Assembly: GCF_006345805.1 (NCBI RefSeq)
Contig: NW_021832942.1
Span: 1 to 29,103 of the forward strand
Origin: Octopus sinensis
Lineage: Eukaryota
Length of the DNA: 29,103 nt
Direction of reading: 5' to 3'
In this document: positions 2,088 through 26,920 of the stretch, piece after piece
How the letters are laid out: every line of letters starts with the position of its first letter
How positions within the stretch are numbered: position 1 is the stretch's first letter
Made by a program: the position numbers and the translations under genes
The notes under the pieces: generated by a model
What the model saw: only the letters and a program-made list of their open reading frames with translations
Told to the model about the DNA's origin: nothing
The model's database searches: none

Positions 2088-3403
2088 CTCTTTTACTCTT
2101 TTACTCTTTTACTTGTTTCAGTCGTTTGACTGCGGCCATGCTGGAGCACCGCCTTTAAGCGAGCAAATCGACCCCCGGGACGTATTCTTTGTAAGCCCAG
2201 TCTCTTTTGTGACGGGCACGTAAACACACCAGCATCGGTTGTCAAGCAATGCTAGGGGGACAAACAGAGACACAAACCTATATATATACATATATACGAA
2301 GGGCTTCTTTCAGTTTCCGTCTACCAAATCCACTCTCAAAGCATTGGTCGGCCCGAGGCTCTAGCAGAAGACATTTGCCCAGTATGCCATGCAGTGGGAC
2401 TGAACAGAGGACCATGTGGTTGGTAAGCAAGCTACTTACCACACAGCCATTCTTCTGCCTATATATATGTTATTTTATTTTACTTGTTTCAGTCATTTGA
2501 CTGCGGCCATGCTGGAGCACCATCTTTTAGTCGAGCAAATCGACCCCAGGATTTATTCTTTGTAAGCCCAGTACTTATTCTATCGGTCTCTTTTGCCGAA
2601 CCGCTAAATGACGGGGACATAAACACACCAGCATCGGTTGTCAAGCAATGCTAGAAGGACAGAGACACACAAACATATACACACACGCTTATATATATAT
2701 ACATATATACGACGGGCTTCTTTCAGTTTCCGTCTACCAAATCCACTCACAAGGCTTTTGTCGGCCCGGGGCTATAGCAAAAGACACTTGCCCAAGATGC
2801 CACGCAGTGGGACTGAACCCGGAACCATGTGGTTGGTAAGCAATCTACTTACCACACAGCCACTCCTGTGCCTATATATATGTTATTTTATTTTACTTGT
2901 TTCAGTCATTTGACTGCGGCCATGCTGGAGCACCGCCATTTTAATCGAGCAACTCGACCCCGGGACTTATTTTTTGTAAGCCCAGTACTGATTCTATCGG
3001 TCTCTTTTGCCGAACCGCTAAGTGACGGGAACGTAAACACACCAGCATCGGTTGTCAGGCAATGCTAGGGAGACAGACACGGACACACAAACACACACAC
3101 ACATACATATATACATATATACGACGGGCTTCTTTCAGTTTCTGTCTACCAAATCCACTCACAAGGCTTTATATATATATATATATATATATACTCTTTT
3201 ACTCTTTTACATGTTTCAGTCATTTGACTGCGGCCATGCTGGAGCACCGCCTTTAGTCGAGAAACTCGACGTCGGGACTTATTCTTTGTAAGCCCAGTAC
3301 TTATTCTATCAGTCTATTTTGCCGAACCGCTACGTTACGGGGACGTAAACACACCAGCATCGGTTGTCAGCTATGTTGGGGGACAATACACACACACAAT
3401 CCA

Positions 3404-4021: not shown

Positions 4022-4057
4022 TGATTTGAAATATTTTCTTTCTTTTTTTTTATACAG

Positions 4058-4138
4058 GACTTGATTGAACACATGCTTCAGGTAGATCCAGAAATGAGGT
4101 TCTCCGCTGCCGAGGTTTTGGACCATCCTTGGGTTGCT
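4058..4138 (+). CDS. DCLK: Doublecortin-like kinase, internal exon (subdomain XI)
   Basis: T-rich tract, tacAG acceptor, GTGAGT donor, 81 bp phase 0. Translates [27 protein letters not shown]. Confidence 0.95.
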
Positions 4139-7251: not shown

Positions 7252-7353
7252 AATGACACTACTGCGAAAGATAACAAATTACATGTGGCCAAGGAATTGA
7301 ACCAATATTTCACACGTACCAAAAAACCAAAAGATGGTTTGGCAGTCATAGCA
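7252..7353 (+). CDS. DCLK: Doublecortin-like kinase, C-terminal tail exon
   Basis: ttcctAG acceptor, GTAAGT donor, 102 bp phase 0. Translates NDTTAKDNKLHVAKELNQYFTRTKKPKDGLAVIA. The end resembles vertebrate DCLK1 GVSVIA. Confidence 0.85.
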
Positions 7354-7527
7354 GTAAGTGAAAATTCTTCAAATATGTGAAAAGACAAATTTTTTTTAAA
7401 TATTTTTAAAATCTGAGATCGGAGTTCGATCCTGTGTATCTTCTTTCATAGAACCATAATTTTTGGATATGTCTGGATGAATTAGGAATTGAATTATAAG
7501 CAGAACAATCTGTAGATTGTATTCTGT

Positions 7528-7528
7528 G

Positions 7529-7573
<45 letters not shown>

Positions 7574-7625
7574 ATCTATCTATCTGTCTATCTGTCTATC
7601 TGTCTATCTATCTATCTATCTATCT

Positions 7626-7658
<33 letters not shown>

Positions 7659-7697
7659 ATCTATCTATCTATCAATCTATCTATCTATGTATCTATC
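7528..7697. repeat. (ATCT)n microsatellite, left of the Tx1 LINE
   Basis: Direct reading. Confidence 0.97.
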
Positions 7698-10600
7698 AAA
7701 CAGAAGGGGATGCAATGCCTCAGAGACCTGCTCAGACGATTCCAACTGTCTGACAGGTACCGACTCGACCACCCAAATGCACCAACGTGGACATGGAGCA
7801 ACCGCAGTGGGTCGTCGAGATCGTATCTAGATAAGATACTGTGTAGGACAGTAGACAAGGATAACTTAGGATGTCCACAATTCCACACAGTCAGCTACAC
7901 GGATCACAAATTGGTGACGTGTACGCTAGACTTAGATAAGGCACATAGACAGGGTCCTGGGTACTGGAAACTGAACGCCTCATTCCCGTCCAGACAAGTT
8001 TTCAGAGACCGGATTAGCACACAAGTAAAGAGGGCTTTGACGGGAGCCATCATCAACAACAAATGGTGGTTTGCCCTCAAGAGAGCAGTAAAAGCAGAAG
8101 CGATTAGGTACAGCAAAGCACTAGCCATAGATAGAAATAGAGTAGAGGGTGAGCTAGTTAAGAAGCTAGAAGAGGCAATTAGAAGCGGCATCGCATCCGA
8201 CGTTTTGGCGGCGAGGTTGGCCCTCGACCAACACTTCAACGCCAAACACGAAGGATGTGCTGTCAGAGCTAGGATGCGTGCTCTAAGGAACGAAGGTGTT
8301 GGAGCCGCGAGAGAGGCCCGGGTGGCAGAGGCGCAACAGGGCAACAAAGCCACCATTCGGTCACTGGTAGATGAACAGGGGCGCGAATTGCTCGAGCCAA
8401 GTAAAATGTGTGAGGCCTTTCAGCAGCATTTTGCCCGACTGTTCGGAACGAGTGGATGGCAAGAACGTAGGGTGGACTTCAGTGCCTACCTACATAGCCT
8501 GCCACGACTCTCGACAAGAAAGGCAGGGTGCTGCGAAGGTGCCATCACGGCGGCGGAAGTGCAGGAAGCGATAGCAGAATGCTCGAGGGACAAATCACCG
8601 GGTTTGGATGGTCTACCCTACGAGTTTTACAATTGTATGCCAGACTTGTTTGAAGACGTCTTGGCAGCGGTATACTACAACTGGCAGCAAGACGGGAGCA
8701 TACCCGGTTTTGTGAGTCGAGGAGCTGTAACTCTGCTGAAGAAAGATCCAAACAAGGGAAACATTATAGATAACTTTAGACCAATCACGCTGCTCAATGC
8801 AGACCTGAAAATTTTGACAAAGGTGTTAGCCAAGAGGTTGGCGCTTGTCATCGAGAAACTGGTCGACAACGCACAAACATGCGCCGTGCCGGGCCGGAGC
8901 ATCCATGACAACCTCCATCTGATGCGCTACATCATAGACAGGGTAGTTAACGAACCTGGCATGGGTGGGGCCCTGATCAACTTGGATCAATCGAAAGCCT
9001 TTGATAGGGTAGACCATCGATACTTGGAGGCAGTCCTGAGAGCGGCTGGTTTCGGTCCCGTTTTCCGCGGCTGGATAGCTGCCTTGTACAGAGCAATCCG
9101 TTCGGTAATTCGCGTAAATGGACATCTATCGAGACCTTTCGACATTGCACGTTCGGTCCGTCAGGGATGCCCCCTCTCGGCGCTTCTATACGTATTGACT
9201 CTTGAGCCACTACTGCGGAAGCTGGCGACTCTAAGGGGCATCCCGCGAGAATTGGGATGCGGGACGAGCGTGTCTGCATACGCGGACGACGTCACCGTCA
9301 TAGTGTCAAGCCACGAGCACATCGAGCGGGTCGGCGAGACACTGAAAGACTACGAAGCGGTGACAGGAGCAAAAATTAACCGGGAAAAGTCAGTGGGCTT
9401 GTGGCTCGGCACCTGGAGAAGCAAGCCCATGCCGTCCACCAGTACCTCCGTCGTGGGACGCTGGACAGACGGCCCGGTTGAGTTGCTCGGGGTCTGGTTC
9501 GGTCCGGACCTCCAAATGGAGAAGAACTGGAACGAGATAACGAGTAGGGTGGTCACTCTCGCCCAGCAATGGGCCGAGAGGAAACTGTCCCTAAAAGGTC
9601 GGGCGGAGGTGGTGAACGCGTACATCGCGTCCATCATCTACTACCGCCTGACAGTCGTACCTTGTCCCGACCCTACCATCACCAAACTAGAACGCATCCT
9701 CTTCCGCTTCTTGTGGAAAGGATGCGTCCCGATGGTCAGGCGATCCATTTGCTGTCAACACCCGTTAAAAGGAGGGCTGGGCATGCCGTGGTTGATGATG
9801 CGCAGACACGCGCTGAGACTGTGACATCCCCGGCTCTATGTAGACGACGGTGAACAGGTGTGGTCGCCGTTTGTGAGGCACGCATTCCCGCAACTCGTCT
9901 CCATGACCGAACTACAGTCGTGGATCAAAAAGAGGCCGAGGAAGGGCGAATGGCACCGCGAGTGTCGCGTTGCTCTCAAGCAACTCTGCCGTCCCGGGTC
10001 GACCTTGAGTGACTTCAACACAACCAAAGCATTCTATAGGGGATTAGTGGAGGAGAGGTAGGACGACGAGCTCGGGGCAAACCTGGGCGTCGACGAGGAA
10101 TACCTGACCCGCCTGTTTCAAACGACTTTCGGCCCGGGACCTATGGACAACTTCCAGAGATCCCTGGCCTGGCGGTGCTACCGAGAAGCGCTACCCGTTC
10201 GGGATAAGCTCTATAGGCATGGCTCGAGAAACACGGGGCCGACCTGCCCGAGATGCGGGCAGAGCGACGAAACCGCTCTGCACGCAATCGTGCAGTGTCC
10301 AGCAATTTCCGACCTGTGGGCTTATGTCGAACGACTGCTGTCACGTGTGGGACGTGTCGGTTTATCAGCCGAGTCTATCGTTAATATCGTCACGCCTCCT
10401 TCTTTCAAACGGGAAGGAAGAGCTAATTTTATCATACTTGTGGCTATGGCGAAAGAATGTATCTGGTGGACGCGCCTGAAAGGATTGGAGACAAACACTT
10501 TCCTCTCTGGTCAATCTCTCATCAACTTCTTCAAGTATCACTTGAAGAGGAAGTGAGAGAAGAGAGGCAAGTTTTGTCTAGTGAATGTTTTAAAAAAAGA

Positions 10601-11029
10601 TGGGTGAATGTAGGAAGGATGGCACGTATGAATGACGAAGCCACTTGACTATGATTCTATGAACCATAAAAATTAATACAGAGAGTTGCTTATTTGCAAA
10701 AAAAAAAAAAAAAAAGAAATATACATGTGACTTCATTGACCGAGGTTACCGTGGTCTTTTCCGTAGGCTTTTCTTTCCACGGGTAAACCTCACCTGTCCT
10801 CCCCTTTACACTTCATATTGACATTTCTGTGATAACGATCCCTATTATTCATTTTTTTTCTCTCCCCCCCTTTTTTTAACCCCTCCCCTTTTTTTTGTCC
10901 TTTTTCTTTCCTTTTACGATCCCTTTTGATCGAAAACCACCACTCTCCTTTTTTTTACCCCCAAAAGAAAAGCTCTACCTTGTAATTTGTTCTATCTGTG
11001 TGCAGCCCTATGTGGCTAATAAAGAAACA

Positions 11030-11030
<1 letters not shown>
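7698..11030 (+). mobile_element. 5'-truncated Tx1/L1-clade non-LTR retrotransposon (ORF2 remnant plus 3' UTR)
   Basis: Endonuclease C-terminus (SYLDKIL, YTDHKLV) and WKLN. RT motifs KSPGLDGLPYEFY, FRPITLLN, LDQSKAFDRV, VRQGCPLS and AYADDV, then GGLG and a CCHC knuckle CPRCGQSDETALHAIVQC. One frame from 7698 with single in-frame stops at 9822-9824 and 10059-10061 and a frameshift near 10553; natural stop about 10646-10648. AATAAA at 11018-11023. Confidence 0.92.
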
Positions 11031-11099
<69 letters not shown>

Positions 11100-11133
11100 G
11101 CTAGCTAGCTAGCTAGCTAGCTAGCTAGCTATC

Positions 11134-11230
<97 letters not shown>

Positions 11231-11231
11231 C

Positions 11232-11275
<44 letters not shown>

Positions 11276-11403
11276 GTCTGTCTGTCTCTCTGTCTGACTG
11301 TCTATCTGTCTGTCTGTCTGACTGTCTGTCTATCTGTCTATCAATCTATCTGTCCATCTGTCTATCTGTCTGTCTGTCTATCTATATCTGTATTCTCTGT
11401 CTG

Positions 11404-11440
<37 letters not shown>

Positions 11441-11473
11441 GTCTGTCTGTCTGTCTGTCTGTCTGACTGTCTA

Positions 11474-11507
<34 letters not shown>

Positions 11508-11524
11508 AATCTATCTGTGCATCC

Positions 11525-11566
<42 letters not shown>

Positions 11567-11786
11567 TCTATCTATCTGTCTGTCTGTCTGTCTGTCTGTC
11601 TGTCGTCTGTCTGTCTATCTGTCTATCAATCTATCTGTCTGTCTGTCTATCTGTCTGTCTGTCTGTATCTATCTATCAATCTATCTATCTGTCTGTCTTA
11701 TCTATGTATCTATATATGTATCTATCTATCTATCTATCTATCTGTCTGTCTGTCTATCTATTTATCTATCTATCTATATCTATCTT

Positions 11787-11817
<31 letters not shown>

Positions 11818-11888
11818 CTATCTATCTATATCTATCTATCTATCTATATCATATCTATCTATCTATCTATCTATCTATTATCTATCTA

Positions 11889-11948
<60 letters not shown>

Positions 11949-11957
11949 ATCTATCTA
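11031..11957. repeat. (ATCT)n/(GTCT)n microsatellite including a (CTAG)n segment near 11097-11130
   Basis: Direct reading. Same orientation as 7528-7697. Confidence 0.97.
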
Positions 11958-12133
11958 TCCGCTCAGTCGAAGTTGACTCTCTGTTACTCGTTGGATCAGT
12001 GTCCCCCAGGCATTTCTATCCTTGGTCGCTTCTTTCAGGTTGGCTATGTCCATTCCTGTGTCACTCTGATGGTGTCAAGCCAACTTGGTGTTGCCACTGA
12101 CCATTCCGAGCATGATGTCCTTCTCCAGGAATT
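11955..12133 (-). mobile_element. 3' end of an RTE/BovB-like LINE with a (GATA)n tail
   Basis: The minus strand translates [55 protein letters not shown], resembling the BovB C-terminus LEKTLMLGKIEG..WLD..DREAWRAAVHGVAKSRTRLSD*. The stop codon TAG runs straight into the GATA repeat. Confidence 0.82.
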
Positions 12134-12140
12134 TTCTTGT

Positions 12141-12360
12141 TTTTACTTGTTTCAGTCATTTGATTGCGGCCATGTTGGAGCACCGCCTTTAATCGAGCAA
12201 CTCGACCCCGGGACTTATTCTTTGTGAGCCCAGTACTTATTCTATCGGTCTCTTTTGCCGAACCGCTAAGTGACAGGGACATAAACAACCAGCATCGGTT
12301 GTCAGGCAATGCTAGGGGGACAAACACAGACACACAAACACACACACATACACATACATA
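12141..12360 (-). mobile_element. SINE family 1, 3' half
   Basis: Same sequence as the 3' halves at 2088-3612. Confidence 0.88.
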
Positions 12361-12361
12361 C

Positions 12362-12431
<70 letters not shown>

Positions 12432-12624
12432 GGGAGAGAGAGAGAAGTAAATATATGGCACAATGAAGTACCGATATTTACTGGAAATAGCGAACGTAAT
12501 AATACGACGCTAATGTATAGCTTCACCGCGTATGTACTAGCAAAAATGCGTGTGTGCAACAAACTTGAAAAAATTGTCTTACCTCCAGGGAGAACATCTG
12601 AAAGATGAAATACCTAGAAAAGGA

Positions 12625-12706
12625 TAATAAGGGACCGGCGCCGGTTTCAGATTTTTCAAGATATGCCTGCCCACATATACTTGATCTATCTTCATCAGCC
12701 AAACAT
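12625..12706 (-). ncRNA. Type I hammerhead ribozyme motif (antisense to DCLK)
   Basis: CUGAUGA at 12698-12692, helix II AGAU/AUCU with a long extension, GAAA, palindromic helix III ACCGGCGCCGGU, GUC site (C17 at 12633). Helix I is weak in this copy (GG/CC, then mismatches). Confidence 0.65.
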
Positions 12707-13291
12707 ATACCACGACAACCTTTCAGATGTTACCACATTAATGCCATTACACTCGACTGAAACGCCGAAACGCTAACAGCACGAGAACGGTGAAGAAGTT
12801 TCAATAAATTAGTAATGCAATACTAGAGTATTGCTTCCAGTAAAAAGTAGCCCGTGAGGGGAAAATATACAAAGAAGTAAATATATGGCCCAACGAAGTA
12901 CCGATATTTACTGGAAATAGCGAACGTAATAATACGACGCTAATGTATAGCTTCACCGCGTATGTAATAGCAAAAATGCGTGTGTGCAACAAACTAGAAA
13001 AAATTGTCTTACCTCCAGGGAGAACATTTTTGCTATTACATACGCGGTGAAGCTATACATTAGCGTCGTATTATTACGTTCGCTATTTCAGTAAATATCG
13101 GTACTTCGTTGGGCCATATATTTACTTCTTTGTATATTTTTCCCTCACGGGCTATTCTTTACTGGAAAGCAATACTCTAGTATTGCATTACTAATTTATT
13201 GAAACTTCTTCACCGTTCTCGTGCTGTTAGCGTTTCGGCGTTTCAGTCGAGTGTAATGGCATTAAAGTGGTAACATCTGAAAGGTTGTCGT

Positions 13292-13381
13292 GGTATATGT
13301 TTGGCTGATGAAGATAGATCAAGTATATGTGGGCAGACATATCTTGAAAAATCTGAAACCTGCGCAGGTCCCACATTATCC
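13292..13381 (+). ncRNA. Type I hammerhead ribozyme with intact core (sense to DCLK pre-mRNA)
   Basis: CUGAUGA 13305-13311. Helix II AGAU(13312-15)/AUCU(13351-54) is extended by UCAAG/CUUGA and AUAUGU/ACAUAU with a GGGCAG loop. GAAA 13355-58. Palindromic helix III ACCUGCGCAGGU 13358-13369. GUC cleavage triplet 13368-13370. Bulged helix I AUGU(UU)GG/CCACAU. Confidence 0.78.
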
Positions 13382-13446
13382 TTTTCACCATCCTCGCAAT
13401 TTTTTCTAGTTTGTTGCACACACGCATTTTTGTTAGTACATACGCG

Positions 13447-14594
13447 GCAAAAGAGACCGATAGAATAAGTACTGGGCTTACAAAGAATAAGTCCCAGGGT
13501 CGATGCTGGTGTGTTTACGTCCCCGTCACTTAGCGGTTCGGCAAAAGAGACCGATAGAATAAGTACTGGGCTAACAAAGAATAAGTCCCAGGGTCGATGC
13601 TGGTGTGTTTACGTCCCCATCACTAAGCGGTTCGGCAAAAGAGACCGATAGAATAAGTACTGGGCTTACAAAGAATAAGTCCCGGGGTCGATGCTGGTGT
13701 GTTTACGTCCCCGTCACTTAGCGGTTCGGCAAAAGAGACCGATAGAATAAGTACTGGGCTTACAAAGAATAAGTCCCAGGGTCGATGCTGGTGTGTTTGC
13801 GTCCCCGTCACTTAGCGGTTCGGCAAAACAGACCGATAGAATAAGTACTGGGCTTACAAAGAATAAGTCCCAGGGTCGATGCTGGTGTGTTTACGTCCCC
13901 GTCACTTAGCGGTTCGGCAAAAGAGACCAATAGAATAAGTACTAGGCTTACAAAGAATAAGTCCCGGGGTCGATGCTGGTGTGTTTACGTCCCCGTCACT
14001 TAGCGGTTCGGCAAAAGAGACCGATAGAATAAGTACTGGGCTTACAAAGAATAAGTCCCGGGGTCGATGCTGGTGTATTTACGTCCCCGTCACTTAGCGG
14101 TTCGGCAAAAGAGACCGATAGAATAAGTACTGGGCTAACAAAGAATAAGTCCCAGGGTCGATGCTGGTGTGTTTACGTCCCCGTCACTTAGCGGTTCGGC
14201 AAAAGAGACCGATAGAATAAGTACTGGGCTTACAAAGAATAAGTCCCAGGGTCGATGCTGGTGTGTTTGCGTCCCCGTCACTTAGCGGTTCGGCAAAACA
14301 GACCGATAGAATAAGTACTGGGCTTACAAAGAATAAGTCCCAGGGTCGATGCTGGTGTGTTTACGTCCCCGTCACTTAGCGGTTCGGCAAAACAGACCGA
14401 TAGAATAAGTACTGGGCTTACAAAGAATAAGTCCCAGGGTCGATGCTGGTGTGTTTACGTCCCCGTCACTTAGCGGTTCGGCAAAAGAGACCGATAGAAT
14501 AAGTACTAGGCTTACAAAGAATAAGTCCCGGGGTCGATTTGCTCGGCTAAAGGCAGGCGGTGCTCCAGCATGGCCGCAGTGAAATGACTGAAAC
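13447..14594 (+). repeat. 94 bp minisatellite derived from the 3' region of SINE family 1 (11 full units plus a final unit running into the SINE end)
   Basis: Units start at 13447, 13541, 13635 and so on to 14481, exactly 94 bp apart and nearly identical. The last unit continues GGGGTCGATTTGCTCG...CATGGCCGCAGTGAAATGACTGAAAC. Confidence 0.95.
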
Positions 14595-14698
14595 GAATTT
14601 TTTTTTCATAAAAAAAATGGAATTGAAACAGTTTTACGTTTTTTATTGCTTTTTATTTAATTATATTTTATTTTTCGTTTTTTTGTTGTTTTTTGCAG

Positions 14699-14782
14699 TC
14701 GACTGCTCTCGATAAAGGGTCCAAGTACTTCCGGGGCCGCGGAGCCTTTACTGTGCACCCGAAACAGGACGAAGTCTTTTAA
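14699..14782 (+). CDS. DCLK: Doublecortin-like kinase, terminal coding exon
   Basis: Long T-rich tract and tttgcAG acceptor. Translates STALDKGSKYFRGRGAFTVHPKQDEVF* (TAA at 14780-14782). The start resembles vertebrate DCLK1 TTALDKERQVFRRR. Confidence 0.85.
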   Translation, partial: STALDKGSKYFRGRGAFTVHPKQDEVF

Positions 14783-14936
14783 AGCCACCAATGTTCCTTC
14801 CACATCTACTTTTATTGAATTTTCATTGAAACACACCTACAACAACAACACAACAACAACAACAAAAACAAGCACAAAGCTATTTGAATTCTCGGCGACT
14901 CCAGCAATAGCAAGAACACTAAAAAAAAAACTGCAG

Positions 14937-17546
14937 TGGATGCGCAATGGCCCGTGGTTAGGGCAGCGGACTCGAGGTCGGAGGATCGCGGTTTCGATTC
15001 CCAGACCGGGCGGGTGTGTGTTTATTGAGCGAAAACGCCTAAAAGCTCCACGAGGCTCCGGCAGGGGTCGGTGGCGACCCCTGTTGTACTCTTTCACCAC
15101 AACTTTCTCTCGCTCTTACTTCTGTTTCTGTTGTACCTGTATTTCAAAGAGCCAGCCTATATATATATACACATGTGGAGGCGCAATGGCCCAGTGGTTA
15201 GGGCAGCGGATTCGTGGTCGAAGGATCGCGGTTTCGATTCCCAGACCGGGCGTTGAGTGTGTTTATTGAGCGAAAACACCTAAAGGCTCCGCGAGGCTCC
15301 GGCAGGGGATTGTGGCGACCCCTGTTGTACTTTCAACACAACTTTCTCTCGCTCTTACTTCCTGTTTCTTGTTGTACCTGTTGTACCGGCGTTGTGTGTT
15401 TATTGAGCGAAAACGCCTAAAAGCTCCACGAGGCTCCGGCAGGGGGGTCGGTGGGACCCCTGTTGTACTCATTTGCCACAACTTTCTCTCACTCTCTCTT
15501 TCTGTCTTGGGTAACGTCCCGTCCTTCTGGGGTGGAGGTCACATACGCCACAGAAACCGGGAAACCCAGCCCATGAGCCCGGCTAGGCTTGAAATGGGCG
15601 AATTTATTTTGTGGAGGCGCAATGGCCCAGTGGTTAGGGCAGCGGATTCGTGGTCGAAGGATCGCGGTTTCGATTCCCAGACCGGGCGTTGAGTGTGTTT
15701 ATTGAGCGAAAACACCTAAAAGCTCCGCGAGGCTCCGGCAGGGGATTGTGGTGATCCTGTTGTACTCTTTCACCACAACTTTCTCTCACTCTTACTTCGT
15801 TTTCTGTTGTACCTGTATTTCAAAGGGCCGCCCTTGTCACTCTCTGTGTCACGCTGAATATCCCCGAGAACTACGTTAAGGGTACACGTGTCTGTGGAGT
15901 GCTCAGCCACTTACACGTTAATTTCACGAGGAAGCTGTTCCGTTGATTCGGATCAACTGGAACCCTCATCGTCGTAACCGACGGAGTGCTTGCTGGGGGT
16001 GGTGGTGATCCCTGCTGTACTCTTTCACCACAACTTTCTCTCACTCTTTCTTCCTGTTTCTGTTGTACTGTTGTACCGGGCGTTGTGAGTGTTTATTGAG
16101 CGAAAACACCTAAAAGCTCCACGAGGCTCCGGCAGGGGTCGGTGGCGACCCCTGTTGTACTCTTTCACCACAACTTTCTCTCACTCTTTCTTCCTGTTTC
16201 TGTTGTACCTGTTGTACCGGGCGTTGTGAGTGTTTATTGAGCGAAAACACCTAAAAGCTCCACGAGGCTCCGGCAGGGGTCGGTGGCGACCCCTGTTGTA
16301 CTCTTTCACCACAACTTTCTCTCACTCTTTCTTCCTGTTTCTGTTGTACCTGTATTTCGAAGGGCCGGCCTTGTCACTCTCTGTGTCACGCTGAATATCC
16401 CCGAGAACTCCGTTAAGGGTGCACGTGTCTGTGGAGTGCTCAGCCACTTACACGTTAATTTCACGTGCAGGCTGTTCCGTTGATTCGGATCAACCGGAAC
16501 TCTCATCGTCGTAACCGACGGAGTGCTCCTGCAGGGGATTGTGGGGACCCCTGTTGTACTCTTTCACCACAACTTTCTCTCACTCTTACTTCCTGTTTTG
16601 TTGTACCTGTATTTCAAAGGGCCGGCCTTGTCACTCTCTGTGTCACGCTGAATATCCCCGAGAACTCCGTTAAGGGTGCACGTGTCTGTGGAGTGCTCAG
16701 CCACTTACACGTTAATTTCACGTGCAGGCTGTTCCGTTGATTCGGATCAACCGGAACTCTCATCGTCGTAACCGACGGAGTGCTCCTGCAGGGGATTGTG
16801 GGGACCCCTGTTGTACTCTTTCACCACAACTTTCTCTCACTCTACTTCCTGTTTCTGTTGTACCTGTATTTCAAAGGGCCGGCCTTGTCACTCTCTGTGT
16901 CACGCTGAATATCCCCGAGAACTACGTTAAGGGTGCACGTGTCTGTGGAGTGCTCAGCCACTTACACGTTAATTTCACGAGCAGGCTGTTCCGTTGATTC
17001 GGATCAACGGAGCCCTCGTCGTCGTAACCGACGGAGTGCTTCAATTGAGCGAAAACGCCTAAAAGCTCTACGAGACTCCGGTAGGGGTCGGTGGCGACCC
17101 CTGTTGTACTCATTTGCCAGAACTTTTTCTCACTCTCTCTTTCTGTTTCTTGGGTAACGCTGAGGGGAGGGGGAACACATACGCCACAGAAACCGGGAAA
17201 CCGGGCCCACGAGCCCGGCTAGGCTTGAAAAGGGCGAAATTATTTTATGGAGGCGCAATGGCCCAGTGGTTAGGGCAGCGGACTTGTGGTCGGAGGATCG
17301 CGGTTTCGATTCCCAGACCGGGCGTTGTGTGTGTTTATTGAGCGAAAACACCTAAAAGCTCCACGAGGCTCCGGCAGGGGTCGGTGGCGACCCCCTGTTC
17401 TACTTTTTCGCCCCAACTTTCTCTCATACTTTCTTCCTGTTTCTTGGGTAACGCAGAGGGTGGGGGAACACATACGCCACAGAAACCGGGAAACCGGGCC
17501 CATGAGGGTTAGGGTTAGGCTAGGCTTGAAAAGGGCGCACAATAAA
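14937..17546 (+). mobile_element. Complex tandem cluster of tRNA-derived SINE family 2 with two alternative 3' tails
   Basis: Heads GGAGGCGCAATGGCCCAGTGGTTAGG...GGTTTCGATTCCC at about 14937, 15176, 15612 and 17248. A shared body is repeated many times. Tail A ends AACCGACGGAGTGCT (4 copies, two of them 257 bp apart). Tail B contains ACAGAAACCGGGAAACC...GGCTAGGCTTGAAA (3 copies). Confidence 0.82.
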
Positions 17547-17717: not shown

Positions 17718-18366
17718 CCCAGCGTCCAATTACTCCCTCCACAACACTAATCTCAAAAAGTCTTCTTGTGAACGTGACCTGGGTATTATTGTCGACAGAG
17801 ATTCGTGTTGGACAAAACACATTGCTAAAATTGCCAAGAAGGCCGAGGGTGTCTTGGCATCACTCACCAAGTCCTTTGTGAGCCGCTCTCCGACTATCTA
17901 TCTGCGGCTTTATATAGCTATGGTAAGATCTCACCTGCAATTTGCATCACCGGTCTGGAACCCCTTTCTTGCCCAGGATATCAATCGTCTGGAAGCCGTT
18001 CAGCGATGTGCAACCAAAAGAATACCCTCCATCAGGAATTTGCCATATTCTGAACGCCTTACTTCCCTGGGCATGGATACATTGAAACTCCGACGTCTGG
18101 CAGCTGACTTGGCAGACACCCATAAAATTATTAACCATCTTACAAACAATAACTCTGAGCACCTTTTCAAACTCCACCCATCTAACACCCGTGGTCATAT
18201 TTAGAAAGTCAGAAAACAGCACAGCTCCCATGACTTCAGGAAACATTTTTTCACGCTGAGAGTTGCTGAAGCATGGAACAAACTGCCGGCATCAGTTGTT
18301 AGTTATCGGAGCACTGCATCCTTCAAAACTTCCATGCTTCCTGAGATTCGCCAACACTACACCTGA
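17718..18366 (+). mobile_element. CR1-like LINE 3' fragment (post-RT C-terminus)
   Basis: ERDLGIIVD, HLQFASPVWNP, LEAVQRCATK, LKLRRLAADL, TRGH, FFTLRVAEAWNKLP. Premature TAG at 18202-18204 and natural TGA at 18364-18366. Confidence 0.88.
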
Positions 18367-19470
18367 TTTTGTCCCTTCCATACACACGCTGAAGCATGGA
18401 ACAAACTGCCGGCATCAGTTGTTAGTTGTCGGAGCACTGCATCCTTCAAAACTTCCATGCTTCCTGAGATTAGCCAACACTACACCTGATTTTCTCCGCT
18501 ACATACACACGCTGAAGCATGGAACAAACTGCCGGCATCAGTTGTTAGTTGTCGGAGCACTGCATCCTTCAAAACTTCCATGCTTCCTGAGATTCACCAA
18601 CACTACACTTGATTTTCTCCCATCCATACACACACAAGCATGGAACAAACTGCCGGCATCAGTTGTTAGTTGTCGGAGCACTGCATCCTTCAAAACTTCC
18701 ATGCTTTCTGAGATTCGCCAACACTACACCTGATCTTCTCCCCTCCATACTCACGCTGAAGCATGGAACAAAATGCCGGCATCAGTTGTTAGTTGTCGGA
18801 GCACTGCATCCTTCAAAACTTCCATGCTTCCTGAGATTCACCAACACTACACTTCATTTTCTCCCATCCATACACACACAAGCATGGAACAAACTGCCGG
18901 CATCAGTTGTTAGTTGTCGGAGCACTGCATCCTTCAAAACTTCCATGCTTCCTGAGATTCGCCAACACTACACCTGATCTTTCCCTCCATACTCACGCTG
19001 AAGCATGGAACAAAATGCCGGCATCAGTTGTTAGTTGTCGGAGCACTGCATCCTTCAAAACTTCCATGCTTCCTGAGATTCACCAACACTACACTTCATT
19101 TTCTCCCATCCATACACACACAAGCATGGAACAAACTGCCGGCATCAGTTGTTAGTTGTCGGAGCACTGCATCCTTCAAAACTTCCATGCTTCCTGAGAT
19201 TCGCCAACACTACACCTGATCTTCTCCCCTCCATACACACACTGAGGCATGGAACAAACTGCCGGTATCAGTTGTTAGTTGTCGGAGCACTGCATCCTTC
19301 AAAACGTCCATGCTTCCTGAGATTCGCCAACACTACACCTGATCTCTCCCCCCATCCACAACACACAAGCATGGAACAAACTGCCGGCATCAGTTGTTAG
19401 TTGTCGGAGCACTGCATCCTTCAAAACTTCCATGCTTCCTGAGATTCACCAACACTACACCTGATTTTCT
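18265..19470 (+). repeat. Ten tandem 121-123 bp copies of that LINE's 3' terminus
   Basis: GCATGGAACA recurs at 18271, 18394, 18517, 18638, 18761, 18882, 19003, 19124, 19247 and 19369. Confidence 0.95.
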
Positions 19471-19471
19471 C

Positions 19472-19866
19472 CATACCCCCTAGACGACGCCGTGGTGATC
19501 TCATTCTTGCTCACAACATCATAAGCGGAAAGTGTAACCTCTCGAAAGAGCTGTTCTTCACTCCTGATCCAGAGCGTAGGTTGCGGGGTCACTCCGAAAA
19601 GCTCTATCTGCGACGATCTCATCTCAGTCGAAGGAGAGGGTCTTTCTCCGTCCGGGTTGCGGATCCGTGGAACAAGCTTCCGGACGAGATGGTGAAGATG
19701 CTGACGACCGCTCGGTTCAAAGTCTCCCTTGACCAGAAATGACCTGAACTCTTTACAAGAACACCACCCTGTACATAACTCCATGTCCCCCCTACATGGC
19801 CTTGCTTTTTGCTTTTTGAGCCAAAAATGAACTAACTAACTAACTAACTAATTAACTAACTAATTA
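19472..19866 (+). mobile_element. Second CR1-like LINE 3' end with a (TAAC)n tail
   Basis: RRRRGDLILAHNIISG...RLRGHSEKL...SFSVRVADPWNKLP. A 3' hairpin CCATGT-ccccc(c)t-ACATGG is followed by AACTAACTAACT repeats. Confidence 0.85.
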
Positions 19867-20113
19867 CTACTACTACTAGTTACAGCAACATGAGAAGCCC
19901 TAGGAACAACTACCACCAAGACAATACCACTGATAGTACCAGTACTGCAAACAATACAACAACAAACACTAACAAGATTCCCGGATTTACTGATTTGTTT
20001 TATTGTTAATTAAAATGAATTTTTTTCTAATTCAATAAAACAATTTTTTTACTAGAAAATGTTTTTTCTTGGTTTTTTTTTTTTTTACTTATTTCTGTGT
20101 AGCAATAAAGTAC

Positions 20114-20311
20114 ATTACGGAGATGTACTTGCATAGCAAGTGACCTGGTCTGAGATCGTGTGCTGGAACGAAAATAATTGCAGCGTGGAAGGTGTTTATA
20201 AGCGATTTAAGAAACTCACAAAAACCGTTAGATTCACTTCAACATTTAAATTGAATTTGTTAAAATATTTTCGTCGCTTTCCGACCGCGACCTGTTCACT
20301 GACAAAGCTTC

Positions 20312-20371
<60 letters not shown>

Positions 20372-20735: not shown

Positions 20736-21169
20736 AAATAATAGTTATCGCCATACTAATATGGCATTCTTATAAAAATAAGAATAAAGCTGTCCGCTTA
20801 TTAGCTCCATGAGGCCATCGCCTTAAGTTAGCTATTTGATACACAAACTGTATCATAACCTTCGAACAAAGGAGGTCAGTCGCTCCACACTACTTGACCG
20901 GCAGCTACAGACGCGTTTTGGGGTATTGCCCCTTTTCAATGCAGCCTAGCCAGACCAGTAGTGTCGCTTCTGACAATCTCTGTTCGAAGGTTTTATTTAC
21001 CTAGCTTCGGTCAATTAGTGTGGAGCGACTGACCTCCCTTGTTCGAAGGTTATATGGATACAGTTTGTGTATCAAATAGCTAACTTAAGGCGATGGCCTC
21101 ATGGAGCTAATAAGCGGACAGCTTTATTCTTATTTTCATAAGAATGCCATATTAGTATGGCGATAACTA

Positions 21170-21175
<6 letters not shown>
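20736..21175. mobile_element. Foldback element (about 172 bp arms) with a hammerhead relic at the loop; probably Penelope-like pLTR derived
   Basis: Arms 20736-20907 and 21002-21175 are near-perfect reverse complements. The loop region carries a hammerhead motif on the minus strand. Confidence 0.65.
20904..20945 (-). ncRNA. Minimal type I hammerhead ribozyme, U3-A8 variant, with G12 changed to A
   Basis: The minus strand reads GCUGCA UUGAAAA GGGG-CAAUA-CCCC AAAA C-GC-GUC UGUAGC. Helix I has 6 bp, helix II has 4 GC bp, and helix III is the palindrome ACGCGU. Confidence 0.62.
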
Positions 21176-22438: not shown

Positions 22439-22475
<37 letters not shown>

Positions 22476-22828
22476 TATGAAGCTTTGTCAGTGAACAGGT
22501 CACGGTCGGAAAGTGAGGAAAAGATTTGAACAAATTCAATTGAAATGTTGAAGTGAATCTAACGGTTTTTGTGTGTTTCTTAAATCGCTTATAAACACCT
22601 TCCACGCTGCAATTGTTTTCGTTCCAGCACACGATCTCAGATCAAGTCACTTGCTATGCAAGTACATCTCCGTAATATATATATATATATGCATATATAT
22701 ATATATATATGAAGCTTTGTCAGTGAACAGGTCACGGTCGGAAAGTGACGAAAAGATTTGAACAAATTCAATTGAAATGTTGAAGTGAATCTAACGGTTT
22801 TTGTGTTTTTTTTAAATCGCTTATAAAA
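22238..22828 (-). repeat. Three inverted copies of element A separated by (TA)n
   Basis: Copies at about 22238-22440, 22474-22676 and 22705-22828 (partial). They are reverse complements of 20114-20316. Confidence 0.85.
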
Positions 22829-23929: not shown

Positions 23930-26920
23930 TCAAAAATGGAAGATAAAATTCCTGGAGGACTGGATCGATGCCCATCCAAACCACATCCCTTTCTTCGTCC
24001 TCACTGAAACCCATCTTAGTGACCTCCACTTGGAAGCCGAGGTGAAAGTTAAAAATTTCAAAGCCATTCGTGCTGATCGTGCTGGCAGAAGAAAGGGTGG
24101 GACTGCCATTTATGTTCATGATTCATTCTCAACAGAAGCTATGAACATATTTTCCAATGGATACTGCGAAGCAGTCGCTATATTCAGTCAAACCAACAAC
24201 TTAACAGTAGTTGGGCTCTACAGACCACCCCAAACGCCCCTACCATGCTTCAAGGAATGCCTCAACAACATAAAGTGTTTCATTCAGCAGTGTCAACCGG
24301 ACAACATTTTAATGACGGGAGCCTTCAACCTTCCCGGGGTTGACTGGTCTACAAACAGTCTGCCGCCAGGTTCTTCTCTCTCAACCCCTGACAGGGAGGC
24401 AGTGGAATCGCTTCTTGACTTCATGGATGATTTCTTCCTGTCCCAACTGGTGCCCGAACCAACGAGATGTCACAAAAACGTCTTAGACTTAATTTTCAGC
24501 AATCACACTGATACTATCCACAATATTGCAGTGGAGAAAACCCTACTCTCCGACCATGACATGGTTCTCTGTGATCTGAGATTTCACCGGCCAAAATGCA
24601 AAACAAATGTCATCCCTCCTGTTCATCCATTTGACACTATGGATTTCCACAATGCAAACTGGGAAGCGATCAATAATAATCTTGCACAAGTCGATTGGTC
24701 CTTCACGCACACATACACACCCACTAACATCAAAAAGTCCTGGCAGTCATTTGTAGACACCATTACGAACGTATGTGCAAACCACACCCCATTAAGATCT
24801 GCAAACAAATCTAAGTGTCGAATCCCTAGAAATAGAAAATCTCTCATCAGGAAAATTAAAAGAATTAACAAAAAAAACCAACGAGCTGAAATACTGTCAA
24901 CAGCAACACACCAACCTGACTGCCATCTCGTCGCTAGAGATTAAAAAACATAAACTCCAAAACAACATGATGTCTATCATCAATAGTCAGAGAAGAGCTG
25001 AAGAGGCCTGGGCCATTGAGAAGATCAAACTCAATCCCAAAGTATTCTTTTCATTTGCAAAAAAACACAGAGTCACTGGTTCTACTGTTGGCCCTCTGAT
25101 TGATGAAAATGGTACTCTTCAAGACAATGCCAAAACCATGGGAGAGATATTGCAGAAACAATATTGCTCTGTTTTCAGCAATCCTGATATGACTGATCTG
25201 GTCTGTATCAGTGATGTTACTCCCCAATACACTTTATCGGACATAACCTTTGGTGCTACTGATGTCTTAGCAGCAATAAAGGAAATGAAGCATAAATCAG
25301 CAGTAGGTCCCGATAGGTTCCCTGCTTGTGTCTTGAAGATGTGTCAACACCAACTTGCACCCACTTGAGCCAATCTGTGGCGGAACTCACTGGATGCTGG
25401 ATATATACCAGAAGACCTATCCCAGTTTGTATTCCCAGTTTTCAAAAAAGGAAACAAATCGCTTGCCGTGAATTACCGTCCAATCTCACTCACCTCTCAT
25501 ATCATTATGGTATTTGAGAGAGTGCTGAGATCGCGTATGACTCATTTCTTGAGAGTCATGATATGCTGAACTCCAACCAGCATGGATTCCGTAATGGAAG
25601 GGATTGCCTGATGCAGCTACTGCATCATTTTGATGACGTTTTGAGAGCCTTGGGAGAGGGTTCCAACACTGATGTCATCTTCCTTGATTTCAGCAAGGCC
25701 TTTGACAGGGTTGATCATAAGATCCTTTTGAGAAAGCTGTCCAATATTGGTGTCACTGGAAAGCTGCTGCAGTGGATCAAGTGCTTCCTGTCTAACAGAA
25801 CCCAACATGTTGTAGTCGAAGGAGTCAAATCCAGCCCAGCCAAAGTCAGCAGTGGTGTCCCACAAGGCACTGTGTTGGACCCACTTCTCTTCATCATCTA
25901 CATTAATGATATTACTGACACCATCAAACACAATAACGTCAGAACTTTCGCTGATGATTCCAAGCTCCAGAAGGTCATCAATGGCGTGGATGACCGAATA
26001 AGCCTTCAGTCAGACCTACTGGCTGTTCTCCAATGGGCGGAAAAGAATAACATGTTACTAAACGAAGACAAATTCGAACTGATCCACATTGGAAGGGAGG
26101 ACGCTCTAAAACTCCCATACTCCCTTCCTTCTGGAGAAATTCTCATGGCGTCTAACAGCATCAGAGACTTGGGAGTAACAGTGGACAACAACATAAGCTG
26201 GGCTACACATATAAGCAGCAAAGTTGATATGGCACGCAGAATGTGTTCTGGATTCTCAGAACCTTCCAGTCGAGAGATTCCCACACCATTATGCTTCTCT
26301 TCTCCACTTTTGCCCGACCCCACCTTGAATACTGCTGTCCACTGTGGTCTCCCTACACAAAACAAAATATCATGAGAATTGAAGCTCCCCAAAGGTCAAT
26401 CACAAAAAGGTAGTAGATGGCATGTCAGACCTTGACTACTGGGGTAAACTAGAGAAGCTGAAACTGTATTCACTCCAACGACGCCGTGAACGCTACATTA
26501 TCTGTATGATGTGGAAAATATTCCATCAGCACTGTCCGAATGATGTTGGCATCACCTTCAAAATGCATCCAAGGCTTGGACCACGTTCCATCCGTCCACA
26601 ACAAAATCTAAATCGCATCACATAACGACAATACGGCACAACTATTTCACCTCAATTGGACCCGCTCTCTTCAACATTACACCAGGACACGTCAAAACAG
26701 AAACTGACCACAAAATTCAAGAAGTCATTGGACAAATTCCTTCAAACAGACCCGGACAAACCACCCACACCCGGATATGTCTCCGCAAACAATAACTCTC
26801 TGCTCGAATGGGCCTCAGTGCCCAAATCCTGAACTGAAAGACTTCGCCAGGTGGTGCTATTAAGTTAGACATGGCCTGGGCCAATACTGGCAAAAGCCTT
26901 TCTAAGTTATTCTAAGTTAT
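23928..26920 (+). pseudogene. Decayed CR1-like LINE ORF2 (AP endonuclease plus RT), nearly full ORF2 length
   Basis: Endonuclease motifs LTETHL, RADRAGRRKGGTAIYV, GLYRPP, GAFNLP, LDLIFSN, LSDHDMV. RT motifs GPDRFP, NYRPISLTS, QHGFRNGR, LDFSKAFDRVDH, SGVPQGTVL, FADDSK, RDLGV. Several frameshifts and stops. Short TTCTAAGTTA tandem tail at 26900-26920. Confidence 0.9.

What the first reader, a model, noticed from the sequence alone, without database searches (positions are those of the whole stretch)
13292..13381. Intact type I hammerhead ribozyme in the sense strand of the last DCLK intron
Seen: every conserved core position is present (C3 U4 G5 A6 U7 G8 A9, G12 A13 A14 A15.1, GUC17). Helix II is long, helix III is the 12 nt palindrome ACCUGCGCAGGU, and helix I is bulged. 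The sister copy on the other strand has ACCGGCGCCGGU, a double compensatory change that preserves the palindrome, which argues for selection on structure. Known: type I hammerheads with palindromic helix III occur in Penelope-like elements and metazoan retrozymes and can cleave as dimers. Inference: this could cut DCLK pre-mRNA after nt 13370 before the terminal exon is spliced.
Basis: partly seen in the sequence, partly recalled or inferred. Interest (0 to 1): 0.88.

Follow-up and report, generated by a model that had tools for sequence, protein, structure and literature searches.

The report
Retrozyme hammerhead in octopus DCLK intron
A real hammerhead-ribozyme motif lies in the last intron of an octopus DCLK-like kinase gene, but it belongs to a small mobile repeat and is locked in a long hairpin with its mirror copy, so it is most likely an ordinary transposon relic and not a regulator of the gene.

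Summary
At 13292-13381 (+) there is a complete type I hammerhead (HHR): CUGAUGA, GAAA, GUC with C17 at 13370, a 43-nt helix II, a 12-nt palindromic helix III and a bulged helix I. A strict descriptor hit 1 of 1000 shuffled windows. A sister copy lies at 12711-12622 (-). No Rfam hammerhead model matches it, even at E<=10.

The gene context also holds. The motif is on the sense strand of the last coding intron (7354-14698) of a DCLK1-like gene in an Octopus of the vulgaris/sinensis group.

The motif is not a gene-specific device. It sits in a ~430-nt, ORF-less, 39% GC repeat inserted as a partial tandem plus an adjacent inverted copy next to microsatellites. That is the Penelope-like/non-LTR retrozyme insertion signature.

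In the sense transcript the HHR is buried in a ~405-bp hairpin with its antisense sister; forcing the ribozyme fold costs about 97 kcal/mol. Copies in O. vulgaris carry a half-compensated helix III, a 3-nt helix III deletion, or have lost the HHR. The HHR is not better conserved than the rest of the repeat, and covariation is not significant.

Verdict: a new member of a known kind. Cleavage of DCLK pre-mRNA is unsupported.

The parts
13292..13381 (+). Type I hammerhead motif on the sense strand of the gene. Helix I 5' strand 13292-13304; CUGAUGA 13305-13311; helix II 13312-13354; G12-A14 13355-13357; helix III palindrome 13358-13369; C17 13370 (predicted cut after 13370); helix I 3' strand 13371-13381.
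   Evidence: Sequence. Descriptor scan with 1 hit in 1000 shuffles. Constrained fold -17.8 kcal/mol against an MFE of -21.4. Pair counts. No Rfam hit.
12622..12711 (-). Sister hammerhead motif on the opposite strand. Helix III is ACCGGCGCCGGU and C17 is at 12633. Helix I is weaker (U.U at 1.3/2.3).
   Evidence: It fails the strict descriptor only on helix I, which has 2 contiguous pairs.
12446..13027 (-). Minus-strand partial tandem of the ~430-nt repeat unit (582 nt, about 1.4 units, one HHR). Its 3' end abuts the microsatellite.
   Evidence: Direct repeat 12446-12597 / 12866-13027 read. Unit reconstruction. nhmmer.
13028..13448 (+). Plus-strand inverted copy of the unit (about 1.0 unit plus a 21-nt terminal redundancy, one HHR), joined head to head to the 5' end of the minus-strand copy.
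   Evidence: (inverted repeat I2).
12526..13447 (+). Predicted ~405-bp hairpin in the sense-strand transcript, formed by the two inverted copies. 85 of the 90 HHR nucleotides pair with the antisense sister copy.
   Evidence: MFE -742.6 kcal/mol against -258.2 for the two halves folded apart. Forcing the HHR fold costs 96.8 kcal/mol.
12366..12445 (.). (TA)n(GA)n microsatellite flanking the 3' end of the minus-strand copy.
   Evidence: Sequence. The same flank is present in L001, L002 and L003.
7354..14698 (+). Last coding intron of the DCLK1-like gene (GTAAGT ... polypyrimidine tract and CAG). It holds the HHR element, a LINE remnant, microsatellites and a 94-nt array.
   Evidence: O. sinensis protein P0004 has the same C-terminus.
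14699..14782 (+). Terminal coding exon (STALDKGSKYFRGRGAFTVHPKQDEVF, then stop), 1329 nt downstream of the predicted cut.
7252..7353 (+). Penultimate coding exon (NDTTAKDNKLHVAKELNQYFTRTKKPKDGLAVIA).
13445..14538 (+). 94-nt x 11.6 tandem array abutting the 3' end of the plus copy. It is flank, not part of the HHR unit, and derives from an internal segment of a SINE-like repeat.
   Evidence: Inverted matches I19, I23 and I24. The array is also present in L001, L002 and L003.

Best explanation
The motif is the self-cleaving hammerhead of a small non-autonomous retroelement, of the metazoan non-LTR retrozyme / Penelope-like element (PLE) associated kind. It landed in the last intron of an octopus DCLK1-like gene.

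Inferred life cycle of the family, taken from published retrozymes. Multimeric transcripts of master copies are cut once per ~430-nt unit by the hammerhead. Adjacent units probably pair through the 12-nt palindromic helix III to form a double hammerhead. The monomers carry 5'-OH and 2',3'-cyclic phosphate ends, are circularised by a tRNA ligase, and are copied back into DNA by a PLE reverse transcriptase. That process leaves partial tandems and adjacent inverted copies at microsatellite targets.

Shown at this locus. There are about 1.4 units on the minus strand, joined head to head to about 1.0 unit on the plus strand. Each strand has one hammerhead, so no monomer can be released. In the DCLK sense transcript the two copies fold into a ~405-bp hairpin that buries the sense hammerhead. 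The copies have since drifted and recombined without detectable constraint.

Conclusion. This is a transposon relic with no demonstrated role in DCLK expression.
For: The motif is real and far beyond chance.

The unit matches the published retrozyme description (PMC7229834). It is about 430 nt, 39% GC, and has no ORF longer than 66 aa; the longest ORF across the HHR has no homologue. As a circular RNA it folds to -118.2 kcal/mol against -92.8 +/- 5.6 for shuffles (z = -4.6), and that fold contains the three hammerhead helices.

The architecture matches the PLE insertion signature described in PMC8557442. A partial tandem has an inverted 5'-truncated copy adjacent to its 5' end, and its 3' end abuts (TA)n(GA)n.

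A second, independent family copy (about 82% identity) lies at L002:16426-16796 (-). Its 3' end also abuts (TA)n.

The helix III hairpin is weak (-1.8 and -3.3 kcal/mol) while the palindrome duplex is strong (-23.5 and -26.5). The dimer is favoured, as in newt, axolotl and PLE hammerheads.

There is no sign of host-level constraint. The arms differ at 5 of 90 positions in the HHR and 6 of about 257 outside it. Variants in O. vulgaris break or delete helix III. Paralogue L002 has lost the HHR copy. L005 has lost the plus copy together with the terminal exon. Covariation is not significant.

The sense HHR is sequestered in the hairpin.

Type I hammerheads and PLEs are already recorded in cephalopod genomes (PMC6962438; PMC8557442).
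Against: No array with two or more hammerheads on one strand was seen. Only two independent insertion loci were available, because no tool here searches eukaryotic genomes by DNA.

No autonomous PLE (RT plus GIY-YIG) carrying this hammerhead was found. The reverse transcriptases in the window are non-LTR LINEs.

Rfam hammerhead models do not score the motif.

The 43-nt helix II and the A10.1-U11.1 pair are atypical. The unit is slightly longer than the published 170-400 nt.

Catalysis is untested. The one double compensatory change (P about 0.03 by chance) could reflect RNA-level selection in the source family.

In the O. sinensis assembly (L001) the antisense sister unit is absent, so the sense hammerhead would not be sequestered there.
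Confidence: 0.8

Rival explanations
1. Exapted regulatory ribozyme. The sense hammerhead cuts nascent DCLK pre-mRNA after 13370, before the terminal exon is spliced, and so tunes the amount or the 3' end of the mRNA. This would resemble the intronic CPEB3 ribozyme or the amniote intronic hammerheads.
For: The motif is on the sense strand of the last coding intron, 1329 nt upstream of the terminal exon. The core is intact with a GUC triplet. The same plus copy is present and identical in O. sinensis. Precedents exist for intronic ribozymes that affect host mRNA (PMC10919898; PMC6155905). In the L001 configuration no antisense copy would sequester it.
Against: There is only one sense hammerhead, so no cis dimer can form, and the monomer HHR-like fold is 0.1-0.5% of the ensemble. 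In the window and in L003 it is buried in a ~405-bp hairpin at a cost of about 97 kcal/mol. Paralogue L002 lost it, and L003 carries a G.A mismatch in helix III. There is no excess conservation relative to the rest of the repeat. At the 0.1-0.8 per min reported for retrozyme hammerheads, cleavage would be slow relative to the roughly one minute Pol II needs for 1.3 kb (elongation rate from my own knowledge). Slow intronic hammerheads do not block splicing. In Xenopus about 43% of retrozyme copies are intronic, so the location is ordinary.
Confidence: 0.04
2. Inactive look-alike. The repeat is a foldback or satellite-type element of some other origin, and the hammerhead-like sequence does not cleave. 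Possible reasons are the A10.1-U11.1 pair, the oversized helix II and missing tertiary contacts.
For: No Rfam hammerhead model matches. The MFE of the isolated RNA is not the hammerhead fold and is not unusually stable (z = -0.39). PLE-type hammerheads cleave poorly in vitro. No PLE partner was found.
Against: A complete core plus three helices is expected in about 0.001 of shuffled windows. The circular monomer MFE contains the full three-way junction. The palindromic helix III and the partial-tandem plus inverted architecture at microsatellites are specific hallmarks of hammerhead-bearing retroelements.
Confidence: 0.1
3. The functional unit is the inverted repeat, not the ribozyme. The ~405-bp intronic double-stranded RNA would serve as a substrate for ADAR or Dicer and could influence splicing or editing of DCLK.
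For: The hairpin is predicted to be very stable. The same two-arm architecture is kept in O. vulgaris L003. Cephalopods edit RNA extensively (my own knowledge, not tested here).
Against: The structure is not conserved. L001 lacks the antisense unit, L002 lacks the plus arm, and L005 lacks the plus arm and the exon. The hairpin is a by-product of the PLE-type insertion mode. No expression data are available.
Confidence: 0.05

Closest known systems
Metazoan non-LTR retrozymes (Cervera and de la Pena 2020, PMC7229834)
   Same: Both have a type I hammerhead inside a short, AT-rich, ORF-less repeat of a few hundred nucleotides. Both have a highly self-paired predicted circular monomer, head-to-tail repetition and occurrence in molluscs.
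   Different: Here only about 1.4 and 1.0 units are present, with one hammerhead per strand. The unit is about 430 nt, above the published 170-400 nt. Helix II is 43 nt instead of about 4 bp plus a loop. Helix III is a 12-nt palindrome instead of 1-2 bp plus a tetraloop. Circular RNA and copy number were not examined.
Penelope-like element pseudo-LTRs with min-hammerheads (Cervera and de la Pena 2014, PMC4209133; Craig et al. 2021, PMC8557442)
   Same: Both show a partial tandem plus an adjacent inverted 5'-truncated copy. Both insert at microsatellites. Both have an enlarged helix II, a short and irregular helix I, and dimer-dependent helix III logic.
   Different: There is no RT/GIY-YIG ORF in or near the element, and the unit repeats every ~430 nt rather than every ~3 kb. 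PLE min-hammerheads lack helix III, whereas this one has a 4-bp/12-nt palindrome.
Newt and axolotl satellite 2 hammerheads (double-hammerhead cleavage)
   Same: Both have a weak helix III with palindromic sequence, so that two copies pair to form the active structure. Both sit in ~330-350-bp repeats.
   Different: The amphibian motifs keep the canonical loop 1-loop 2 contacts and short helices, and they occur in very long arrays.
Intronic self-cleaving ribozymes with host roles (amniote RECK/CTCL/DTNB hammerheads; CPEB3 HDV-like ribozyme, PMC10919898)
   Same: A sense-strand ribozyme motif inside an intron of a gene expressed in neurons. The amniote hammerheads are thought to derive from retroelement hammerheads.
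   Different: Those motifs are conserved across classes of vertebrates and stand alone. This one is embedded in a recent repeat, is paired with an antisense copy, and is variably lost or damaged among close relatives and paralogues.

Membership tests
Hammerhead ribozyme, type I | Conserved core: C3 U4 G5 A6 N7 G8 A9, G12 A13 A14, A15.1-U16.1, H17 | tested here: met
   All are present at 13305-13311, 13355-13358 and 13369-13370. They are identical in all six copies.
Hammerhead ribozyme, type I | Three helices around the core, with helix I open and helices II and III closed | tested here: met
   There are 29 pairs, with 98.6% of cells paired and 29-46% when partners are slid. The constrained fold is -17.8 kcal/mol.
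Hammerhead ribozyme, type I | Usual G10.1-C11.1 pair closing helix II (usual by my own knowledge; not an absolute requirement) | tested here: not met
   The pair is A10.1-U11.1 in every copy. The effect on rate is unknown.
Hammerhead ribozyme, type I | Match to the curated covariance models (Rfam Hammerhead_1 and related families) | tested here: not met
   No hammerhead family is reported at gathering score or at E<=10 on 701 nt or 116 nt. The 43-nt helix II is the likely reason, but that was not tested.
Hammerhead ribozyme, type I | Tertiary contact between helix I and helix II peripheral loops | not testable with these tools
   An internal loop (AGA/AAA) lies 4 bp from the core in helix II, and a mismatch or bulge lies 3-6 bp from the core in helix I. 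Whether they interact is unknown.
Hammerhead ribozyme, type I | Site-specific self-cleavage after H17 | not testable with these tools
   This needs an in vitro transcription assay.
Metazoan non-LTR retrozyme | Type I hammerhead within a 150-450-bp repeat with low GC and no ORF, LTR, PBS or PPT | tested here: met
   The unit is about 430 nt and 39% GC. The longest ORF is 66 aa, and the ORF across the HHR has no homologues.
Metazoan non-LTR retrozyme | Head-to-tail tandem copies, each with a hammerhead (two or more per strand) | tested here: not met
   At this locus there are about 1.4 units with one hammerhead on the minus strand and about 1.0 unit with one on the plus strand. Arrays elsewhere in the genome could not be searched.
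Metazoan non-LTR retrozyme | Monomer predicted to form a highly self-paired circular RNA | tested here: met
   Circular MFE is -118.2 against -92.8 +/- 5.6 kcal/mol for shuffles, z = -4.6.
Metazoan non-LTR retrozyme | Dispersed multicopy family expressed as circular and linear RNA | tested here: inconclusive
   One further independent copy lies at L002:16426-16796. Expression is not testable here.
Penelope-like element insertion | Partial tandem (pseudo-LTR) with an inverted 5'-truncated copy at its 5' end; microsatellite target | tested here: met
   compared with the description in PMC8557442. Both independent copies end at (TA)n or (GA)n.
Penelope-like element insertion | ORF with a telomerase-like RT and a GIY-YIG endonuclease | tested here: not met
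   There is no such ORF in the element. The window's reverse transcriptases are LINE-type, with APE and zf-RVT domains. If the element is PLE-mobilised, it is non-autonomous.

The most novel reading that the evidence does not exclude
A retrozyme hammerhead, or the long intronic hairpin made by its two inverted copies, has been co-opted in octopus neurons. It would act as a switch on the last intron of a DCLK-like kinase, for example through ribozyme cleavage when the hairpin is melted or edited by ADAR, and would control use of the terminal exon.
Probability: 0.03. Interest if true: 0.7.

Novelty: new member of a known kind. Interest (0 to 1): 0.25.

Why it matters
If the reading is right, this adds a cephalopod family to the known hammerhead-bearing retroelements. 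It also shows a structural variant, with a very long helix II and a 12-nt palindromic helix III, that the curated Rfam models miss. Genome annotations of cephalopods therefore probably undercount such ribozymes. It is also a caution: a sense-strand ribozyme motif in a neuronal gene's intron is what random retrozyme insertion produces, and it needs conservation and structural context before a regulatory role is proposed.

Tried and rejected
Rfam scans at three stringencies gave no hammerhead match.

To fetch other genomic copies I searched the protein database with the spurious 59-aa ORF that spans the hammerhead. It gave no hit.

A metagenome scan with a family-specific gapped DNA pattern gave no hit.

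I used the LINE RT as a handle to reach more octopus loci. The hits were mostly non-octopus or on short contigs, so I did not pursue them.

The idea that the whole region is an inverted genomic duplication was rejected. The arms end asymmetrically: about 0.39 extra unit plus a microsatellite on the left, and the 94-nt array on the right.

The idea that the 94-nt array belongs to the element was rejected. The array matches internal segments of SINE-like repeats elsewhere in the window and persists in L002, where the plus copy is gone.

Possible support for in vivo cleavage from the 5' end of the L002 copy lying near the predicted cut site was judged ambiguous. The upstream 25 nt can also be aligned to a decayed GAAA/helix III segment, and an assembly gap follows.

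ARAGORN found no tRNA genes, so the SINE-like arrays cannot be called tRNA-derived from this evidence.

The partition function of the 1-kb hairpin overflowed, so MFE differences were used instead.

Full report
THE OBSERVATION

The bases at 13292-13381 on the plus strand read as follows. The helix I 5' strand is GGUAUAUGUUUGG and the first core box is CUGAUGA. A 43-nt helix II follows (AGAU / AGA / UCAAG / U / AUAUGU / loop GGGCAG / ACAUAU / CUUGA / AAA / AUCU). Then come GAA, the 12-nt palindrome ACCUGCGCAGGU (A15.1 to U16.1), C17 at 13370, and the helix I 3' strand CCACAUUAUCC.

My own descriptor scan recovered exactly this site, with the cut after 13370. It required CUGANGA, GAAA, UH and at least 3, 4 and 4 contiguous pairs in helices I, II and III. 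It found one site in 1000 dinucleotide-preserving shuffles of the whole window scanned on both strands. The motif is real and not a chance match.

The sister copy is real too. It lies at 12711-12622 on the minus strand, with helix III ACCGGCGCCGGU.

Two reservations apply. No Rfam hammerhead model reports the site, either at gathering score or at E<=10 on 701 or 116 bases. The pair that closes helix II at the core is A-U rather than the usual G-C (usual by my own knowledge).

FOLDING OF THE ISOLATED MOTIF

The 98-101-nt RNA is not unusually stable (z = -0.39). Its minimum-energy fold keeps helix II but not helices I and III.

- The hammerhead fold lies 3.6 kcal/mol (plus copy) and 2.1 kcal/mol (minus copy) above the minimum.
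- It makes up 0.1-0.5% of the ensemble.
- The helix III hairpin is worth only -1.8 and -3.3 kcal/mol, while the palindrome as an intermolecular duplex is worth -23.5 and -26.5.
- The homodimer is strongly favoured, at -57.5 against 2 x -21.4 kcal/mol.

This is the behaviour described for newt and axolotl satellite hammerheads and for hammerheads of Penelope-like elements, which cleave as double hammerheads (PMC7229834; PMC4209133).

GENE CONTEXT

Plus-strand exons with splice sites are present at about 922-951, 1961-2065, 4055-4135, 7252-7353 and 14699-14782; the last ends in a stop codon. The joined peptide matches DCLK1 best among solved structures (E = 1.6e-31, against 4.8e-23 for CaMK1). 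It is 95-97% identical to proteins annotated as DCLK1-like in Octopus vulgaris, and as CaMK1-like fragments in O. sinensis. The O. sinensis protein has the same C-terminus.

So the motif is on the sense strand of the last coding intron (7354-14698), 1329 nt upstream of the terminal exon.

WHAT THE MOTIF BELONGS TO

The hammerhead is the last 90 nt of a repeat unit of about 430 nt.

- On the minus strand the unit is present as a partial tandem. Positions 13027 down to 12446 make 582 nt, about 1.4 units, and 12446-12597 repeats 12866-13027.
- Immediately adjacent to the 5' end of that copy, head to head, is an inverted plus-strand copy at 13028-13448. It is about one unit plus a 21-nt terminal redundancy.
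- The 3' end of the minus copy abuts a (TA)n(GA)n microsatellite.
- The unit has 39% GC and no ORF above 66 aa. The ORF across the hammerhead has no homologue among 5.8 billion proteins.
- Reconstructed as a circular monomer, it folds to -118.2 kcal/mol against -92.8 +/- 5.6 for shuffles (z = -4.6). That fold contains all three hammerhead helices.

These are the published properties of metazoan non-LTR retrozymes: type I hammerheads in 150-450-bp AT-rich repeats, expressed as self-paired circular RNAs of about 170-400 nt, and found in molluscs among others (PMC7229834).

The partial tandem, the adjacent inverted 5'-truncated copy and the microsatellite target together are the insertion signature of Penelope-like elements, whose pseudo-LTRs carry hammerheads (PMC8557442). 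[quoted passage not shown] It also finds that about 43% of Xenopus copies are intronic (10.64898/2026.07.22.740005). Cephalopod genomes are already known to hold Penelope-type elements and Rfam-type hammerheads, with 235 in the giant squid (PMC6962438).

RELATED LOCI

No tool here searches eukaryotic genomes by DNA, so I reached related sequence through the DCLK-like proteins.

- O. sinensis contig L001 carries the plus copy with an identical hammerhead. It has only about 0.39 unit of the minus copy, so the sister hammerhead is absent there.
- O. vulgaris has at least four paralogous copies of this DCLK 3' region on one 12-Mb contig.
- L003 (2.09 Mb) has the same two-arm architecture as the window. 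Its plus copy has helix III ACCGGCGCAGGU, the half-step with a G.A mismatch. Its minus copy has ACCGGCGGU, a 3-nt deletion that destroys the palindrome.
- L005 (7.80 Mb) keeps the minus copy (ACCGGCGCCGGU) but has lost the plus copy together with the terminal exon.
- L002 (8.95 Mb) keeps only remnants of the element. The plus copy with its hammerhead is replaced by unrelated sequence.
- L004 lacks the region.
- An independent family copy, about 82% identical, lies at L002:16426-16796 on the minus strand. Its CUGAUGA box is intact, and its 3' end is cut off inside helix II at a (TA)n tract.

IS THERE SELECTION ON STRUCTURE?

Under five random substitutions in 90 nt, such an event has a probability of about 0.03, so it is suggestive. 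It is, however, a single event.

- On the six copies, 26 of 29 pairs never vary.
- One pair varies on one side only (U-A / U-G).
- One pair shows the double change, but also a mismatch and a gap.
- Every covariation measure is reached by 252 of 500 shuffles.
- Between the two arms in the window, the hammerhead carries 5 differences in 90 nt. The shared part outside it carries 6 in about 257 nt.

In L003 the variants at helix II and at 15.4 are swapped between the arms relative to the window. This looks like recombination or conversion between the inverted arms, with a breakpoint inside the palindrome (inference).

Three explanations for the double change remain open. It may have been inherited from two different template RNAs of a family in which helix III covaries. 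It may have arisen by DNA-level correction of a quasi-palindrome. It may be chance. None of these implies selection by the DCLK gene.

WOULD IT CUT DCLK PRE-mRNA?

In the window this is unlikely, for five reasons.

1. The sense transcript has one sense hammerhead, so the favoured dimer cannot form in cis.
2. The antisense sister copy is transcribed first. The two copies then form a hairpin of about 405 pairs (12526-13447), at -742.6 kcal/mol against -258.2 for the halves folded apart. In that fold, 85 of the 90 hammerhead nucleotides pair with the antisense copy. Forcing the hammerhead fold costs 96.8 kcal/mol.
3. Retrozyme hammerheads measured so far cleave at about 0.1-0.8 per min. The polymerase needs roughly a minute to reach the terminal exon 1.3 kb away (elongation rate from my own knowledge).
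4. A hammerhead that cuts an intron co-transcriptionally did not reduce splicing in vivo; only a much faster ribozyme did (Dye et al. 2006 and Fong et al. 2009, as summarised in PMC2995048).
5. The motif is damaged or lost in close paralogues.

One caveat: in the O. sinensis contig the antisense unit is missing, so the hammerhead would be free there. Whether that is real or an assembly collapse is unknown.

COMPARISON AND VERDICT

The element works like a non-LTR retrozyme / non-autonomous Penelope-type repeat. It meets most of the defining features that can be tested here: core, three helices, unit size and composition, self-paired circle, and insertion architecture.

It does not meet three criteria at this locus. 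There are not two or more hammerheads in tandem. No autonomous partner was found. It does not match the Rfam models.

Its hammerhead is a structural variant with a 43-nt helix II, a 12-nt palindromic helix III and an A10.1-U11.1 pair. I rate it a new member of a known kind, of modest interest. The proposed regulatory cleavage of DCLK pre-mRNA is not supported by any evidence gathered here, though only an experiment can exclude it.

Noticed in passing
L002, L003, L004, L005 (O. vulgaris GCA_951406725.2, contig CATOCA020000001.1 at 8.95, 2.09, 8.60 and 7.80 Mb): The 3' part of the DCLK-like gene is present in at least four paralogous copies on one 12-Mb contig. Each has different deletions, and the annotated proteins are fragments or chimeras (for example P0003, zinc fingers fused to the DCLK tail). 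The window's gene may therefore be one of several partial duplicates and not the single functional DCLK.
   Followed up: partly
window 13445-14538; L003 32525-36531: A 94-nt tandem array has 11.6 copies in the window and at least 42 in L003. It is derived from an internal segment of a SINE-like repeat, with inverted matches at 2526-2636, 2940-3050 and 3249-3362.
   Followed up: partly
window 13382-13395 compared with 12582-12621 (minus copy) and L002 16740-16790: The plus copy lacks about 39 nt that follow the hammerhead in the minus copy and in the independent L002 copy (TAGGTATTTCATCTTTCAGATGTTCTCCCTGGAGGTAAGA). It has ACCATCCTCG in their place. The change is shared by the window, L001 and L003. 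The missing piece is bounded by splice-site-like sequences (TTTCAG and GGTAAGA).
   Followed up: no
L003 31697-31794 (-) and 32369-32466 (+), compared with window 12618-12715 (-) and 13288-13385 (+): Variants at helix II (A/G) and at helix III position 15.4 are swapped between the two inverted arms in O. vulgaris relative to the window. This suggests recombination or gene conversion between the arms, with a breakpoint inside the 12-nt palindrome.
   Followed up: partly
window 7710-10556 (+) and 24030-26375 (+): Two non-LTR LINE remnants. The first has RVT_1 plus zf-RVT, and its relatives carry an APE endonuclease domain. The second has APE plus RVT_1, broken into three ORFs. Neither is a Penelope-like element.
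   Followed up: partly
window 14936-17450 and 18266-19472: Further tandem arrays have periods of 141, 241 and 257 nt (SINE-like units with GGTTCGATTCCC-type boxes, but no tRNA gene called by ARAGORN) and 123/244 nt.
   Followed up: no
window 20111-20351 with 22439-22679; 20736-20854 with 21057-21175: Two more long inverted repeats (241 nt at 95% and 119 nt at 99% complementarity) lie downstream of the gene.
   Followed up: no
window 922-951: The kinase exon reads [10 protein letters not shown], where DCLK1 and an O. vulgaris paralogue (P0035) have Cys (LLCGFP). This could mark the copy as a diverging duplicate.
   Followed up: no
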